A DNA stretch of 64,000 nt from Macrostomum lignano (lineage: Eukaryota): assembly GCA_002269645.1 (NCBI GenBank), contig NIVC01000189.1, positions 75,875 through 139,874 of the forward strand, read 5' to 3'. Shown in pieces: positions 35,000-41,084 of this stretch. Positions within the stretch are counted from its first letter, which is position 1. Each line of letters begins with the position of its first letter. Under the pieces are notes generated by a model. That model made no database searches, had not been told where the DNA came from, and worked only from the letters and a program-made list of their open reading frames with translations. The translations under genes and the position numbers were made by a program.

Positions 35000-36212
35000 T
35001 CAGCTGCTGATGAAACCGTTCAGCTGCAAGAATGCGCAGATTTTATCAACACCGTGGATGCAATTGTCCGAAAGCAAACGGTATTTAGAGCCACAAATAT
35101 CGAATAGTTGTCTTAGCGTCACTCCGAAACTGAACCAGCTGAACATGCTGGCCTTTAACTCGCGAATCAGTTCCCAGCCGTACATATCGGATTTTTTTAT
35201 TTTAACCAAGCGACACTCGCCCTTGCGATAGCACTCTCTGGACGTGCCGATTGCCTTATCGCTTTCTACTCCTGTGTAATTATATTATGCGGCGTAGTCA
35301 TGGGGTGAATGTTGCATGGGGGCAGTTGCCCCCCCCCAAAAAAAAGAGGCTGGCAGAAATTATGGCACCCCCTTGCCCCGTTGCCCCCTTACTTGGCGCC
35401 CTCAATCACAACAGGTGCACAGCATCTCTGTTCCTGCCGTCATTTAGACTATATGTGCACAATATAGTTGGTAAAGAACTGTATGAATCAAACTAGTCTA
35501 TTATCACGAACCCGAATCCTACATCACTGACCTTTTTAAAAAAGAACGAGAAAAACTGTAACAATGACAGCCTCACCTTTCTCGATCAGGTAGAGCTCTC
35601 CACTCGTAGTCTTGGCTACCGCGGCTTGGTGCCCGGGCCCGAAGCCGCTTGAAAAGAGCGAACTACCGCCGGAGGCACTATCAAGTGGCCGTTTGTAAAC
35701 TTTTACAGACTCTACTTGAGCGTCAAGATCGACGTCTCTAGTTTGAGTCCGAGTTGGCCATAAGCCTTGAATGGCTCGGCTTTGAATGTCATAGTCAACT
35801 GAATCAGATGATGCATCAGATTGAAACTTCCTCTGCCTGCTGATCCCCATGACTTCGTGGCCTCCTGAAACAGTTGTGAGGATAAAAGTTTTGAAATATA
35901 TCAGCACGCAGTTTCTGAAGGACAGAATTAAGATTATACCTACCAGGTAGCTAATTGGCTAACAAATGAGGGCCAACTCCAAAGGCACAGAGTGAATATA
36001 TTTACCGATTAGAGAAAGTCAAGGTCGCTATACAACTCTTTGCGGCTTTTACTGACTGTTTAAACTGACTATATACAAAATAGCGAGTTTGCCAGTGAAG
36101 CCTTACCAAATCCGTTGGGTCGGAATTCACCAACAGCCTCAAACATTTGGCCTCTCATGGTGCCATTCGAACATTCGAGCGTCATTGCGCTACAATAGAA
36201 GCCACCGCTCAT
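35000..36212 (-). CDS. Permuted papain-fold (LRAT/PPPDE-like) protein, copy 1
   Basis: Exons 36212-36107, 35864-35577, 35271-35000 (phase 1 introns, GT-AG), about 221 aa with no stops. Motifs VKVYKRPL...GHQAAVAKTTSGELYLIEKG and YRLLSDNCIHGV fit the His-before-NC order of LRAT/PPPDE enzymes. Splice sites are conserved in copy 2. The start codon is uncertain. Confidence 0.65.
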
Positions 36213-36854
36213 TGTGACTGCAAAAATTTCGTTAGAGTTGTCGGTTTTTTCTGGAAAGTTTTCTGAATATGGATGCTTAATGAATGATTTGCCTTATTGC
36301 ATATATATAGTGTGATATATGGCTTGAGTCGAGTTATACGGTACTGCAACGTACGTACGTGTACTCAACCAAAGGCCGTGCTATACGAGCTTTATATTGT
36401 ACTCACAAGTATAGTTGCATTATATTTCTCCGTACAGTTCTACTTTCTGGTTTGAGACCCAGACAGACAGACAGATAGACAGACAGACAGACAGCTGTAT
36501 GCAAAGAAGTAGACTGCAAGAAAAGCAGACAAATGGGAGCTACGAGTGCAGCGAAGTTCCACTTGAATTGAGTACAATTTAGCTATCTTACTGGCTATTT
36601 TTTGAGTTGTTCAAGTGTGTGCGACGAGTCATGCACTCGTAGTTGGTTGGCTGGCAGCTAGTTTCTCTGTGCAGCTGTTCCTGCTCATCCGTGTGTACAA
36701 TTTAAGTAGGCATAATAAAGTTACATACTTGTTATCTGTACATGTCTGTACAATCATATAACTCCTATGACCAATATGCTTTTTTCCATTTTATTTATTG
36801 TTTATAGCTAAAGTATTTCGACTGCGATTTAATTTAGAGAGCAGACAAAGGGCC

Positions 36855-37265
36855 TGTCTGTCTGTCTGTGTGTCTGTCTGTGTGTCTGTCTGTCTGTCTG
36901 TCTGTGTGTCTGTCTGCCTGTCTGTCTGTCTGTCTGTCTGCCTGTCTGTCTGTCTGTCTGTCTGTCTGTCTGTCTGTCTGTCTGTCTGTCTGTCTGTCTG
37001 TCTGTCTGTCTGTCTGTCTGTCTGTCTGTCTGTCTGTCTGTCTGTCTGTCTGTCTGTCTGTCATAGTGTCTGTCTGTCTGTCTGTCTGTCTGTCTGTCTG
37101 TCTGTCTGTCTGTCTGTCTGTCTGTCTGTCTGTCTGTCTGTCTGTCATAGTGTCTGTCTGTCTGTCTGTCTGTCTGTCTGTCTGTCTCTCTGTCTGTCTT
37201 TATGTCTGTCTGTCTGTCTGTCTGTCTGTCTGTCTGTCTGTCTGTCTGTCTGTCTGTCTGTTTGT
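36855..37265 (+). repeat. (CTGT)n microsatellite
   Basis: About 100 units. A short (CAGA)n also lies at 36460-36493. Confidence 0.95.
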
Positions 37266-38689: not shown

Positions 38690-39681
38690 CTGTTCGACTT
38701 TTGCAAATGCTCGCGCTTCTTTGAAGGCGGCGACAAATACTGGAAGCTCAACATAACTGGAAGCCGATGCACCATATCAATACCTTTAAGATCAGGCAGC
38801 ATCTTACTGTCCCAATAATCTACAAAAGCGCAGAGTCGCGTTGAAAGTTTTAGAAAGGCGGCGGCAAACTCAAAAGCTCGATTTCCATGAAGAAATTAAC
38901 GATTGCTGGAACGATTGGTGACTACCTGATGGAGCTGATGGGATTCGATGAGATGGGAGAGGGGAATGAAAGAATAGAGGAAAATAAATAAGAAAAGGGA
39001 TGGAGAAAATGCAATCGCTACTGGCAGTAGTAGCTATAGTACAGGGGAAGGAGCTCATGTACCATCACATCAGTAGCTATTAATGCTCATCATAAGAAAA
39101 TTTATACAAGTTTAAAAGAATCCTAAAAGCGTCTTTAGGAACCACTGCATGCATAGCAATGACATTTGTGTAGCTGTACATTCCATACGTAAAGAGCTGA
39201 AATTGCTTCAAAAAGGACAGACAGACGGGAGCGACGATTCCAGTCAGTCAAGCGGCAATTCGCATAAATGTGCACTTGTTATTTTCACTACAAAACCGGT
39301 CATGTGACAATGCAGTACCTTTTATTGTTTTTTATTCTAAAATAGCGATTACAAACGGTTGCAATATACAAGTAGCTCGGTCGCCGGCGAAGTTCTAAAC
39401 TGAGATATAAAACATTAACTTTATACAGTGACGGCATTACAGTAGCTTTCATGGCTTGATATTAACCAATCACAATTAAAGCCGATCTGTGAGGAAACAC
39501 CTTAAAGTGAAAGAAGAAAAGATACTTTTTAATGATCTACAACTATGAATAAACAATCGAAATAGGTGAAATACGGCATATGAGCCTAATGAAATTTTGT
39601 TAGTTATTAGTAAAAAACAAAAAGGTGATTCACGATTTGACGAGGAATCAACTGTCGTATAGCAGAGCTACTTTCACTCGA

Positions 39682-41084
39682 TCAAGACGCATTGATGAAA
39701 TTGTTCTGTTCCAAGAAGTTGCAGATTTTACGAACACCGTCAATACAGTTGTCCCGCAGTAAATTGTAAGCGGAGCCGCATCTATCAAGCAGATGTCTTA
39801 GCGTCGCGCTGGAATTCGGAAATTCGGCCTTCAGCTTGCGAACCAGCTCCCAGTCGTGGATATCCGATTTTTCTATTTTAACCAAGCGACACTCGCCCTT
39901 GCGATAGCACTCCTTGGACTTGCCGATGTTACTTTCGCTGCTTACTCCTGGATAGAAAATTAAGAGCATAATTGAGGCGCTAATTAGGAAAAATTAAAGA
40001 AATTAGGAATAAAAATATAAATTGCAAAAGGATAATGTAGATCGTTTCTGCAAATCTAATTTTTAAATCTAGTCTAATCTAACCAATAACATTCCCATAG
40101 GTGACCACACGATGGCACCTCCCTCAGTGGCGCCGCCTCAGTGGCCTCCACTGACAAAAATTCTTGGCTACGCTCTTGCAGTTCTTGCTAGCTAAATTAT
40201 AAAATTTCCCATCATGTAGACTAGCTACGCTCGTATGTTTGAATCTGGGGATGAGAAATAACTGGCTTAAAATCCTGATCCCGAAAAGAAAGAAAAACTC
40301 GAACAATAAAAGTTAATTGCTAGCGTCGGAGCATCTTTACCTTTTTCAATCACGTAGCGCTCTCCGCTCGTAGTCTTGGCTACCGCGGCTTTGTGATCGA
40401 ATCCACAGCAGCTCGAACTACTGCCGCAGAGTTTGTCAAGTTGCCGTTTGTAAACTTTTACAGACTTTACTTGAGCGTCAAGATAGAGGTCACTGGTTTG
40501 AGTCGGAGTTGGCTCAGCTCAACGAGATGGAATGGAGCTTTGAATGGCCCGGCCAAAGAAGCCTGGAAATCCATCGTCATCAGAGTCGTCACCGGAATCA
40601 GAAGAAGATGCATCAAACTGTAACTGCATCTGCCTGATCCCCATGACTTCGTGACGACCTGAAACATTTGTAAGGATAAAAGTTTTGAAAAATATCAACA
40701 CGCGATTACCCAGAGGAACAGAGGAGTGTAGCTAGCTAAGTAGCTAACACACGAGAACCAATCCCAAAAGCACAAGGTGAATATCTGTATGCCGATGAGA
40801 GTTAAGGCTGCTGTACATAATCTGTGAGCAGCGTGGGTGCTCGTGCTCAAGGGTCAACAGTGCAAGCCATTACATTTAATTTCTGATTTGTGGCGCTTTT
40901 ACTGACTGGTTTAAACTGTTTAAATTGACTAAGCACGCAGCAGTTGGAATTTATAGTTTGCCAATGAAATCTTACCAAGTCCGTAGCATCGGAATGCACC
41001 AACAGCTGTAAACGCTTCGACTTTCATGATGCCATTTGAACATTCAAGCTTCATTGCGCTAAAGTATACAAAGCCACCGCTCAT
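39682..41084 (-). pseudogene. Permuted papain-fold (LRAT/PPPDE-like) protein, copy 2, with one in-frame TGA
   Basis: Exons 41084-40976, 40658-40341, 39947-39682. Motifs VKVYKRQL...DHKAAVAKTTSGERYVIEKG and YNLLRDNCIDGV. A single TGA at 40521-40519, with the frame preserved afterwards. Confidence 0.6.

What the first reader, a model, noticed from the sequence alone, without database searches (positions are those of the whole stretch)
35000..41084. Unannotated tandem family of small permuted-papain (LRAT/PPPDE-like) enzymes
Seen: two paralogs with conserved exon structure, H(Q/K)AAV...Y.IEKG and Y.LL.DNC motifs, and substantial amino-acid divergence elsewhere. The ORF track shows only fragments. 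Established: His-before-NC is the signature of circularly permuted NlpC/P60 enzymes (LRAT/PLAAT acyltransferases, DeSI/PPPDE isopeptidases), a fold also used by viral and effector proteins. Inference: a lineage-specific, fast-evolving family embedded among mobile elements, a candidate defence or effector enzyme.
Basis: partly seen in the sequence, partly recalled or inferred. Interest (0 to 1): 0.7.

Follow-up and report, generated by a model that had tools for sequence, protein, structure and literature searches.

The report
Flatworm H-box/NC cysteine-enzyme gene pair
Two tandem three-exon genes in the flatworm Macrostomum lignano encode a very divergent member of the known "permuted papain-like" (LRAT/PLAAT and PPPDE) cysteine-enzyme superfamily; one copy is intact, the other is broken, and nothing points to a defence or effector role.

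Summary
On the minus strand there are two three-exon paralogues, copy 1 at 35000-36212 and copy 2 at 39682-41084. They have canonical GT-AG introns at identical phase-1 positions and lie in a ~4.8-kb tandem duplication. The window is Macrostomum lignano contig NIVC01000189.1.

Copy 1 encodes the intact 221-aa protein, which GenBank already lists as a hypothetical protein. Copy 2 carries an in-frame TGA in exon 2. The sister locus has a different lesion, a 4-bp deletion, so copy 2 is decaying.

The family is tiny: four M. lignano paralogue groups plus intronless genes on unidentified environmental, eukaryote-like contigs. Across it His114, Asn201 and Cys202 are conserved, and position 130 is always Glu, Asp or His.

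An AlphaFold model built on a 13-sequence alignment gives a confident core of five strands followed by helices. The His lies on strand 2 and the Cys at a helix N-terminus. The only coherent PDB matches are a picornavirus H-box/NC 2A protein, and they are not significant. Profile comparisons put the catalytic residues in register with PLAAT3 and DeSI-1. Pfam hits stay below threshold.

Verdict: a new, divergent member of a known superfamily. LRAT/PLAAT-like is favoured over PPPDE. The defence/effector idea is unsupported.

The parts
36107..36212 (-). Copy 1, exon 1 (ATG at 36212; codons 1-35 plus the first base of Gly36)
   Evidence: Spliced model. The product is 100% identical to GenBank PAA73370.1. 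The donor is GTAAGG.
35577..35864 (-). Copy 1, exon 2: acidic/Ser-rich linker, strands 1-3 of the core, His114 codon (35631-35629) and Glu130 codon (35583-35581)
   Evidence: His114 is invariant in 13/13 homologues, and position 130 is always E, D or H.
35000..35271 (-). Copy 1, exon 3: strands 4-5 and the helices, Asn201-Cys202 (Cys codon 35062-35060), stop codon at 35002-35000
   Evidence: Cys202 sits at the N-terminus of predicted helix 202-215 and aligns with PLAAT3 Cys113 and DeSI-1 Cys108.
34969..34974 (-). AATAAA, a candidate polyadenylation signal about 25 nt after the copy 1 stop codon
   Evidence: Read directly from the sequence. Its use is an inference and was not tested.
40976..41084 (-). 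Copy 2, exon 1
40341..40658 (-). Copy 2, exon 2, with an in-frame TGA at 40521-40519 (CGA, Arg, in the sister locus and in UniRef A0A1I8HPC4)
   Evidence: The sister locus L004 instead has a 4-bp deletion in the same exon.
39682..39947 (-). Copy 2, exon 3 (YNLLRDNC motif; stop codon at 39684-39682)
32815..36459 (.). Tandem duplication unit A: downstream non-coding segment, copy 1 and proximal upstream region
   Evidence: blastn and repeat finder: 70-91% identity to unit B at an offset of 4.68-4.99 kb.
37574..41319 (.). Tandem duplication unit B: the same layout, carrying copy 2
36854..37268 (.). (CTGT)n microsatellite, about 104 units, upstream of copy 1
   Evidence: TRF.
41555..41726 (.). (CTGT)n microsatellite, 43 units, in the matching position upstream of copy 2
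   Evidence: TRF.

Best explanation
The locus is a host gene of Macrostomum lignano together with its decaying tandem duplicate.

Copy 1 encodes a 221-aa cytosolic protein. Its C-terminal ~140 residues form a very divergent domain of the circularly permuted NlpC/P60 (papain-like) superfamily, the H-box/NC group that holds the LRAT/PLAAT acyltransferases-phospholipases, the picornavirus 2A(H/NC) proteins and the PPPDE/DeSI isopeptidases.

Inferred mechanism:
- Cys202, at the N-terminus of the last long helix, is the nucleophile.
- His114, at the start of strand 2, is the general base.
- Glu130, at the end of strand 3, orients the His. This position is Asp in one paralogue and His in the environmental relatives.
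- The enzyme forms a thioester acyl-enzyme intermediate, which is resolved by water (hydrolase) or by an acceptor (acyltransferase).

I favour an LRAT/PLAAT-like lipid-acyl chemistry as the ancestral activity. Two other M. lignano paralogues keep a PLAAT-style C-terminal hydrophobic tail anchor, and the whole domain scores best against LRAT/PLAAT. The two window copies have lost that anchor and gained an N-terminal ~80-residue extension (a Cys/Gly-rich segment plus an acidic disordered linker), so their substrate may have changed.

Copy 2 is a pseudogene or null allele in this haplotype.

What is shown: gene structure, duplication, lesions, residue conservation and predicted secondary-structure order. 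What is inferred: the three-dimensional adjacency of the triad, catalysis and substrate.
For: Identity and gene models:
-. The window is 100% identical to NIVC01000189.1.

Conservation:
- In 13 homologues with a mean column identity of 32%, His114, Lys131, Trp164, Cys191, Tyr195 and Asn201 are invariant.
- Cys202 and Asp200 are kept in 12/13, and position 130 is only E, D or H.

Structure:
- AlphaFold with the 13-sequence alignment gives pLDDT of roughly 83-92 over most of residues 80-221, with dips in the loops.
- The element order is strands 85-95, 113-121, 126-131, 145-156 and 165-172, then helices 184-191 and 202-215.
- That matches the published H/NC 2A description of five antiparallel strands with the H-box on strand 2, followed by a helical half carrying the NC motif (bioRxiv 10.1101/2024.04.06.588386).
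- In the Foldseek PDB search, the only hits with TMt of about 0.5 and probability 0.2-0.4 are Aichivirus 2A entries 7zv1 and 7zv6.

Profile comparison:
- Core against a five-sequence LRAT/PLAAT alignment scores 25.5. The 150 column shuffles give 11.9 +/- 2.4 with a maximum of 19.7.
- That alignment pairs His114 with His23, position 130 with His35 and Cys202 with Cys113.
- Against DeSI-1/2 the score is 18.1, compared with 11.0 +/- 1.9 for shuffles.

Other support:
- Pfam is sub-threshold: Peptidase_C97 at E 0.08 on the NC region of copy 1, and LRAT at E 0.14 on P0007 residues 86-184 against profile positions 16-109 of 120.
- UniRef names the cluster of paralogue P0004 'LRAT domain-containing protein'.
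- Paralogues P0003 and P0004 have C-terminal hydrophobic segments with KD19 of 2.2 and 1.95. PLAAT3's anchor scores 2.08, and both window proteins stay below 1.0.
- All four M. lignano paralogues share the phase-1 intron after [ED]K-G.

Pseudogene status of copy 2:
- The window has a TGA, and sister locus L004 has a 4-bp deletion.
- Between the two loci, copy 2 differs at 24 aligned positions, split equally between exons and introns, and most exon substitutions change the protein. Copy 1 differs by one intronic indel.
Against: - No database match reaches significance. Pfam hits are far below the gathering thresholds (13 bits against 24-29).
- Neither a single-sequence nor a profile search finds any LRAT- or PPPDE-family chain among PDB sequences.
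- Every Foldseek PDB hit has E > 0.2.
- The hhalign probabilities are only 13.5% and 1.3%, and most of the score comes from the short Y-x-L-x-x-N-C-x-H stretch. The H-box half on its own is marginal: 11/150 shuffles reach its score against LRAT and 3/150 against PPPDE.
- The alignment used for AlphaFold is shallow (13 sequences, Neff about 2.7).
- I could not read the model coordinates, so the His-Cys distance is untested.
- The motif around the Cys (DNC[IWV][HN][GA]) is neither NCEHF nor NCNHF.
- The His to third-residue spacing is 16, not the 12 of PLAAT3.
- One homologue, P0008, has Asp in place of the Cys.
- There is no expression or biochemical data.
Confidence: 0.7

Rival explanations
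1. The fold is the same, but the enzyme is a PPPDE/DeSI-type isopeptidase (deSUMOylase, deubiquitinase or similar) working with a Cys-His dyad, not a lipid acyl-enzyme.
For: - The best Pfam hit for the window protein itself is Peptidase_C97 (E 0.08).
- The H-box half ('G-x-v-H-q-g-v-V-v') resembles the PPPDE 'GIWHTSIVV' more than the LRAT H-box: score 13.6 with 3/150 shuffles reaching it, against 11.9 with 11/150.
- The window proteins are soluble, with no membrane anchor, like the DeSI proteins.
Against: - The whole-domain hhalign score is lower than for LRAT/PLAAT (18.1 against 25.5).
- The conserved E/D/H at position 130 aligns with the third triad residue of PLAAT3.
- Two paralogues carry PLAAT-like tail anchors.
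- The coherent PDB fold hits are the LRAT-like 2A(H/NC) proteins, not the DeSI-1 entries 2wp7 and 3ebq.
Confidence: 0.2
2. The protein is not an active enzyme. Either the H...NC pattern marks a structural or binding protein derived from the fold, as proposed for parechovirus 2A, or the fold assignment itself is wrong.
For: - No hit is significant by sequence or by fold against solved structures.
- Homologue P0008 lacks the Cys.
- dN/dS in the core is fairly high at 0.61.
Against: - His114 and Asn201 are invariant, Cys202 is kept in 12/13, and position 130 takes only the residues known for the third triad position, in an alignment with only 32% mean identity.
- The Cys is predicted at a helix N-terminus.
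- The hhalign scores exceed every shuffle for two independent families.
Confidence: 0.1
3. The pair is cargo of a mobile element or a recent viral acquisition, not an ordinary host gene family.
For: - A gag/aspartic-protease fragment lies 2.5 kb downstream of copy 1.
- An older UniProt gene model (P0009, 1901 aa) fuses the protein with an HTH_48 transposase-like region.
- The best BFVD fold hits are two Mimiviridae proteins (probability 1.0, E 4e-4 and 1e-3).
Against: - The duplicated unit has no terminal inverted or long terminal repeats.
- Its flanks are not repeated at the other family loci.
- Four unlinked paralogues share an ancient phase-1 intron.
- Pattern-plus-tblastn scans of viral and metagenome contigs found no relatives.
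- The retroelement fragment lies outside the duplicated unit.
Confidence: 0.05

Closest known systems
LRAT/PLAAT (H-rev107-like) family: Pfam PF04970, PROSITE LRAT domain, e.g. human PLAAT3 (PDB 4DOT/4FA0)
   Same: - Permuted order, with the His strand before the Cys helix.
- Five strands followed by helices.
- In hhalign, His114, position 130 and Cys202 pair with His23, His35 and Cys113.
- An Asn precedes the Cys, and a Tyr-x-Leu lies five residues upstream.
- M. lignano paralogues P0003 and P0004 have a C-terminal hydrophobic tail like PLAAT1-4 and LRAT.
   Different: - It fails the Pfam threshold (best 12.9 bits against 24.3).
- The motif is DNC[IWV][HN][GA] instead of NCEHF.
- The third triad residue is Glu or Asp in the flatworm proteins.
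- The strand 2-strand 3 hairpin is four residues longer.
- The window proteins lack the membrane anchor and carry an ~80-residue N-terminal extension.
PPPDE/DeSI isopeptidases: Pfam PF05903, MEROPS C97, e.g. DeSI-1 (PDB 2WP7/3EBQ)
   Same: - Permuted His...Asn-Cys arrangement.
- The H-box 'G-x-x-H-x-x-[IV]-V-V' is very similar.
- These are soluble small proteins.
- It is the best, though sub-threshold, Pfam hit for the window protein.
   Different: - It fails the Pfam threshold (13.2 bits against 29.2).
- The whole-domain profile score is lower than for LRAT.
- No DeSI structure appears among the fold hits.
- Some family members carry membrane anchors, which are not typical of DeSI.
Picornavirus 2A(H-box/NC) proteins: Aichivirus A 2A (PDB 7ZV1/7ZV6) and parechovirus 2A
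   Same: - They are the only coherent matches among solved structures (TMt 0.49-0.52).
- They share the five-strand sheet with the H-box on strand 2, followed by a helical NC half.
   Different: - The matches are not statistically significant (E 1.6-2.7), and identity is 12-15%.
- The viral proteins are parts of polyproteins, and at least the parechovirus ones have a rearranged, probably non-catalytic topology.
Two Mimiviridae proteins in BFVD: Moumouvirus australiensis A0A2P1EKP2 and Tupanvirus A0A6N1NL70
   Same: They are the best structural matches overall (probability 1.0, 137-139 aligned columns, 17-19% identity).
   Different: - They are much longer proteins (366 and 535 aa), annotated as F-box/FNIP or uncharacterized.

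Membership tests
LRAT/PLAAT (Pfam PF04970) | Scores above the Pfam gathering threshold for the LRAT domain | tested here: not met
   Only one of 13 members hits at all: P0007, E 0.14, 12.9 bits against a cut-off of 24.3. The window proteins give no LRAT hit.
LRAT/PLAAT (Pfam PF04970) | Permuted catalytic order: H-box His on strand 2, a second His or polar residue on strand 3, and the Cys of the NC motif at a helix N-terminus near the C-terminus of the domain | tested here: met
   His114 starts strand 113-121, Glu130 ends strand 126-131, and Cys202 starts helix 202-215. hhalign pairs them with His23, His35 and Cys113 of PLAAT3. Conservation is shown.
LRAT/PLAAT (Pfam PF04970) | NCEHF signature around the nucleophile | tested here: not met
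   The family consensus is D-N-C-[IWV]-[HN]-[GA]. Only Asn-Cys, and sometimes the His at +2, are shared.
LRAT/PLAAT (Pfam PF04970) | C-terminal hydrophobic membrane anchor | tested here: not met
   The window proteins have a maximum KD19 of 0.97 and 0.89. The anchor is present in paralogues P0003 (2.21) and P0004 (1.95), compared with 2.08 for PLAAT3.
LRAT/PLAAT (Pfam PF04970) | Significant three-dimensional similarity to a solved family member | tested here: inconclusive
   In the Foldseek PDB search the best coherent hits are Aichivirus 2A(H/NC), TMt 0.49-0.52 with E 1.6-2.7. The PLAAT2/3/4 structures are not listed. The query included about 80 low-confidence N-terminal residues that could not be trimmed.
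LRAT/PLAAT (Pfam PF04970) | Thioester acyl-enzyme chemistry on phospholipids or retinol | not testable with these tools
   This needs biochemistry.
PPPDE/DeSI (Pfam PF05903, MEROPS C97) | Scores above the Pfam gathering threshold for Peptidase_C97 | tested here: not met
   Copy 1 gives E 0.08 and 13.2 bits against a cut-off of 29.2, covering only residues 179-214. No other member hits.
PPPDE/DeSI (Pfam PF05903, MEROPS C97) | A His...Cys dyad in permuted order, alignable with DeSI-1 His38 and Cys108 | tested here: met
   hhalign places His114 on the DeSI-1 H-box His and Cys202 on the NCN Cys. The score is 18.1 against shuffles of 11.0 +/- 1.9, with 0/150 reaching it. The H-box half alone is reached by 3/150 shuffles.
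PPPDE/DeSI (Pfam PF05903, MEROPS C97) | Isopeptidase activity on SUMO, ubiquitin or similar modifiers | not testable with these tools
   This needs biochemistry.
Permuted NlpC/P60 papain-like superfamily (Pfam clan Peptidase_CA) | Papain-like alpha+beta fold with the Cys at a helix N-terminus packed against a sheet carrying the His, and the two side chains adjacent | tested here: inconclusive
   The secondary-structure order and the positions of the residues fit. I could not read the model coordinates, so the His-Cys distance was not measured.

The most novel reading that the evidence does not exclude
The family is an undescribed clade of the permuted NlpC/P60 superfamily with a Cys-His-(Glu/Asp/His) triad. 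It is shared by macrostomid flatworms, an unidentified environmental eukaryote and a domain of Mimiviridae proteins. In the flatworm, a tail-anchored lipid enzyme has been turned into a soluble, N-terminally extended enzyme with a new, non-lipid substrate.
Probability: 0.15. Interest if true: 0.5.

Novelty: new member of a known kind. Interest (0 to 1): 0.3.

Why it matters
If the assignment holds, it adds a small, very divergent branch to the H-box/NC (LRAT/PLAAT and PPPDE) enzymes that no Pfam model covers at present. The branch has an acidic third triad residue, and within one species it has both tail-anchored and soluble forms.

That would make it a compact natural experiment on how membrane anchoring and the third catalytic residue shape substrate choice in this fold. 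M. lignano supports transgenesis (PMC5730564) and, to my knowledge, RNAi.

It does not open a long-standing question, and it has no demonstrated link to defence, effectors or mobile elements.

Tried and rejected
- A single-sequence AlphaFold run was useless (mean pLDDT 41).
- Single-sequence and profile searches of PDB sequences found no LRAT- or PPPDE-family chain. The single-sequence search returned nothing and the profile search only ankyrin-repeat noise.
- Two profile searches of the 5.8-billion-protein collection and one exhaustive phmmer run added only about ten relatives, so the alignment stays shallow.
- Pattern-plus-tblastn scans of IMG/VR viral contigs and JGI metagenome contigs found no relatives.
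- The scan of prokaryotic genomes could not be run because the alignment has no stretch conserved enough.
- Literature and supplement searches for the locus tags found nothing.
- Selenocysteine read-through of the copy 2 TGA was considered and rejected. The sister locus has CGA there, the position lies in a poorly conserved linker, and the same exon carries an independent 4-bp deletion in the sister locus.
- A transposon-cargo origin was rejected (see rival explanations).
- The UniRef names 'Protein kinase domain-containing', 'SAWADEE domain-containing' and 'HTH_48 domain-containing' were disregarded. Pfam finds no such domains in the 221-aa and 230-aa proteins, and at least one of the names belongs to a 1901-aa fused gene model.
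PLAAT3 and PLAAT2 were verified as exact matches to PDB chains, and DESI1 agrees with the 3EBQ residues printed. The other sequences are unverified, so the hhalign scores are supportive only.

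
Full report
**1. What is there**

The window is eukaryotic DNA from the free-living flatworm Macrostomum lignano. Positions 29001-46212 are 100% identical to GenBank contig NIVC01000189.1 of assembly GCA_002269645.1. This is the Mlig_3_7 assembly described in PMC5730564.

Two paralogous genes lie on the minus strand.

- Copy 1 has exons 36212-36107, 35864-35577 and 35271-35000. It splices through canonical GT...AG introns into a 666-nt ORF of 221 codons.
- Copy 2 has exons 41084-40976, 40658-40341 and 39947-39682.
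- In both genes, both introns split a Gly codon in phase 1 at homologous positions.
- The two proteins share 139 identical residues (about 63%), with dS 0.45, dN 0.25 and dN/dS 0.55 (0.61 in the catalytic-domain part).

The genes sit in a tandem segmental duplication. Unit A (32815-36459) matches unit B (37574-41319) at 70-91% identity with an offset of 4.68-4.99 kb. A (CTGT)n microsatellite lies in the same place upstream of each gene. tblastn finds no third copy in the window.

**2.

Copy 1 is not unannotated. Its product is identical to GenBank PAA73370.1/PAA88431.1, 'hypothetical protein BOX15_Mlig012613g1/g2'.

Copy 2 has an in-frame TGA at 40521-40519 in exon 2, with no Met downstream, so here it can make only an 82-residue fragment. 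M. lignano is a neopolyploid (PMC10733133), and a second, 98-99% identical locus exists (L004, NIVC01001016.1). At that locus the same codon is CGA, but the same exon carries a 4-bp deletion that shifts the frame.

Between the two loci, copy 1 differs by one intronic indel. Copy 2 differs at 24 aligned positions, split equally between exons and introns, and most exon substitutions change the protein. Copy 2 is therefore evolving neutrally and has been disabled twice independently. An intact 230-aa version exists only as a UniProt entry from an older assembly (P0002).

So the 'tandem family' here is one working gene plus one decaying duplicate. That also accounts for part of the high dN/dS.

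**3. The family**

An exhaustive phmmer run against 1.84 billion representatives and two profile searches found only a handful of relatives.

- Two further M. lignano paralogue groups: P0003/P0010/P0011 at 46-47% identity and P0004/P0012 at 34%.
- Intronless genes on low-coverage contigs of one ENA metagenome assembly and one Logan assembly: P0005-P0008, P0013 and P0014, at 22-29%.
- Those contigs have sparse ORFs with almost no Pfam hits, so they look eukaryotic. Two of them carry two copies each.
- All four M. lignano paralogues share the phase-1 intron right after [ED]-K-G, so this is an old host gene family.

In the 13-sequence alignment (mean column identity 32%), His114, Lys131, Trp164, Cys191, Tyr195 and Asn201 are invariant. 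Asp200 and Cys202 are kept in 12 of 13 sequences. Position 130 is Glu or Asp in the flatworm and His in the environmental sequences.

Paralogues P0003 and P0004 end in a Gly/Ala-rich hydrophobic segment as hydrophobic as the PLAAT3 tail anchor. The two window proteins have none. Instead they carry an N-terminal ~80-residue extension: the exon 1 segment plus an acidic, Ser-rich linker.

**4. Is it a permuted papain-like (NlpC/P60) domain?**

No single test is significant, but all of them point the same way.

(a) Pfam.
- There are only sub-threshold hits.
- One is Peptidase_C97/PPPDE on the NC region of copy 1 (E 0.08).
- The other is LRAT across the whole domain of P0007 (E 0.14, profile positions 16-109 of 120).

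(b) Structure prediction.
- AlphaFold with the 13-sequence alignment gives a confident core, with pLDDT about 83-92 over most of 80-221.
- The order is five strands followed by helices. His114 opens strand 2, Glu130 closes strand 3 and Cys202 opens the last long helix.
- This is the layout described for H-box/NC proteins.

(c) Fold search.
- Foldseek against the PDB gives nothing significant.
- The only coherent hits are the Aichivirus A 2A H-box/NC protein: TMt 0.49-0.52, probability 0.2-0.4, E 1.6-2.7.
- The untrimmed, disordered N-terminus depresses all scores.
- Against predicted viral structures, two Mimiviridae proteins match with probability 1.0. I could not follow these up.

(d) Profile comparison.

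| Comparison (hhalign of the core alignment) | Score | 150 column shuffles | Shuffles reaching it |
|---|---|---|---|
| Whole domain vs LRAT/PLAAT alignment | 25.5 | 11.9 +/- 2.4 | 0/150 |
| Whole domain vs DeSI-1/2 alignment | 18.1 | 11.0 +/- 1.9 | 0/150 |
| H-box half vs LRAT/PLAAT | 11.9 | 8.6 +/- 1.9 | 11/150 |
| H-box half vs PPPDE | 13.6 | 9.1 +/- 2.0 | 3/150 |

- The LRAT/PLAAT alignment pairs His114, position 130 and Cys202 with His23, His35 and Cys113 of PLAAT3.
- The DeSI alignment puts His and Cys in register.
- Most of the whole-domain score comes from the Y-x-L-x-x-N-C-x-H stretch.

(e) Naming. UniRef names the cluster of paralogue P0004 'LRAT domain-containing protein'. This is a lead, not a test.

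**5. Mechanism**

Best-supported reading (confidence about 0.7 at the superfamily level): a thiol enzyme of the H-box/NC permuted NlpC/P60 group.

- Cys202 is the nucleophile, His114 the base and Glu130 the orienting third residue.
- The enzyme works through a thioester intermediate.

I favour an LRAT/PLAAT-like acyl-lipid chemistry as the ancestral activity. The reasons are the tail-anchored paralogues, the third residue in register with PLAAT3 His35, the higher whole-domain score and the 2A(H/NC) fold hits. A PPPDE-type isopeptidase remains a serious rival, about 0.2. For the soluble window proteins, the substrate is open.

All catalytic statements are inference.

**6. Context**

Nothing nearby suggests defence or effector function.

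- The neighbours are a degenerate LTR-retroelement fragment, with gag at 31954-32493 and aspartic protease at 30649-31494, outside the duplicated unit.
- Further away are an RPEL-repeat gene, a liprin-like coiled-coil gene and a RING + NHL (TRIM-like) gene.
- There are also short dispersed repeats and many minisatellites.
- The proteins have no signal peptide-like hydrophobic N-terminus.

**7. Verdict**

The fold-level interpretation is supported by weak lines of evidence that agree. The functional speculation is unsupported.

This is a divergent new member, in effect a small new family, of a known superfamily, next to its own pseudogene. Interest is modest (0.3).

Noticed in passing
window 36854-37268 and 41555-41726: Long (CTGT)n microsatellites (about 104 and 43 units) sit about 0.5-0.6 kb upstream of each gene copy, at matching positions in the duplicated unit. 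Their lengths differ 2.4-fold between the units.
   Followed up: partly
window 40521-40519; L004:5321-5640: Copy 2 is disabled by different lesions in the two near-identical loci of the neopolyploid genome: a CGA-to-TGA change here and a 4-bp AAGT deletion in the sister locus. Copy 1 is identical in both.
   Followed up: yes
window 30649-32493 (-): A degenerate LTR-retroelement fragment with a gag ORF (Retrotrans_gag) and an aspartic protease ORF. No reverse transcriptase was recognised in the adjacent ORFs.
   Followed up: partly
window 45931-46289 and 10427-10766 (inverted); also L006 and L007: A dispersed repeat of about 360 bp, 75-89% identical between copies. It is also present next to two other family paralogues on other contigs and is probably a short non-autonomous element. 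A second repeat pair lies at 45112-45354 and 52371-52617.
   Followed up: no
window 54423-60318 (+): Exons of a TRIM-like gene: a RING finger at 54423-55112 and NHL repeats at 57885-59078 and 59941-60318.
   Followed up: no
window 16603-16989 (-); 12032-12403 (+): An exon with RPEL repeats (actin-binding, of the Phactr/MRTF type) and an exon of a liprin-alpha-like coiled-coil gene.
   Followed up: no
window 1577-2605, 8504-9616, 14671-15956, 19489-20363, 21378-22587, 28211-28559, 48860-50487: Many minisatellite arrays read as long open frames in several frames (for example the PTKKQG..., LTEECRA... and LSLTYLP... repeats). They account for most of the long 'ORFs' in the window and are probably non-coding.
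   Followed up: no
L007:8871-9584 (-): A single-ORF Fic/DOC-domain gene (237 aa, E 3e-9) lies 1 kb from the tail-anchored paralogue P0004 on another M. lignano contig.
   Followed up: no
copy 1 residue Cys191 (window 35095-35093): A second cysteine, in a 'C-G-x-x-Y' motif 11 residues before the candidate nucleophile, is invariant in 13/13 homologues. That makes it better conserved than Cys202 itself (12/13). Its role is unexplained.
   Followed up: no
L001:2142-2714 and 10000-10581; L008:3229-3633 and 5098-5679: In the unidentified environmental eukaryote-like contigs the family also occurs as two intronless same-strand copies per contig, so local duplication of this family recurs.
   Followed up: partly
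BFVD hits A0A2P1EKP2 (Moumouvirus australiensis) and A0A6N1NL70 (Tupanvirus soda lake): The best structural matches of the model are domains inside two much longer giant-virus proteins (Foldseek probability 1.0). Sequence-based scans of viral contigs found no relatives.
   Followed up: partly
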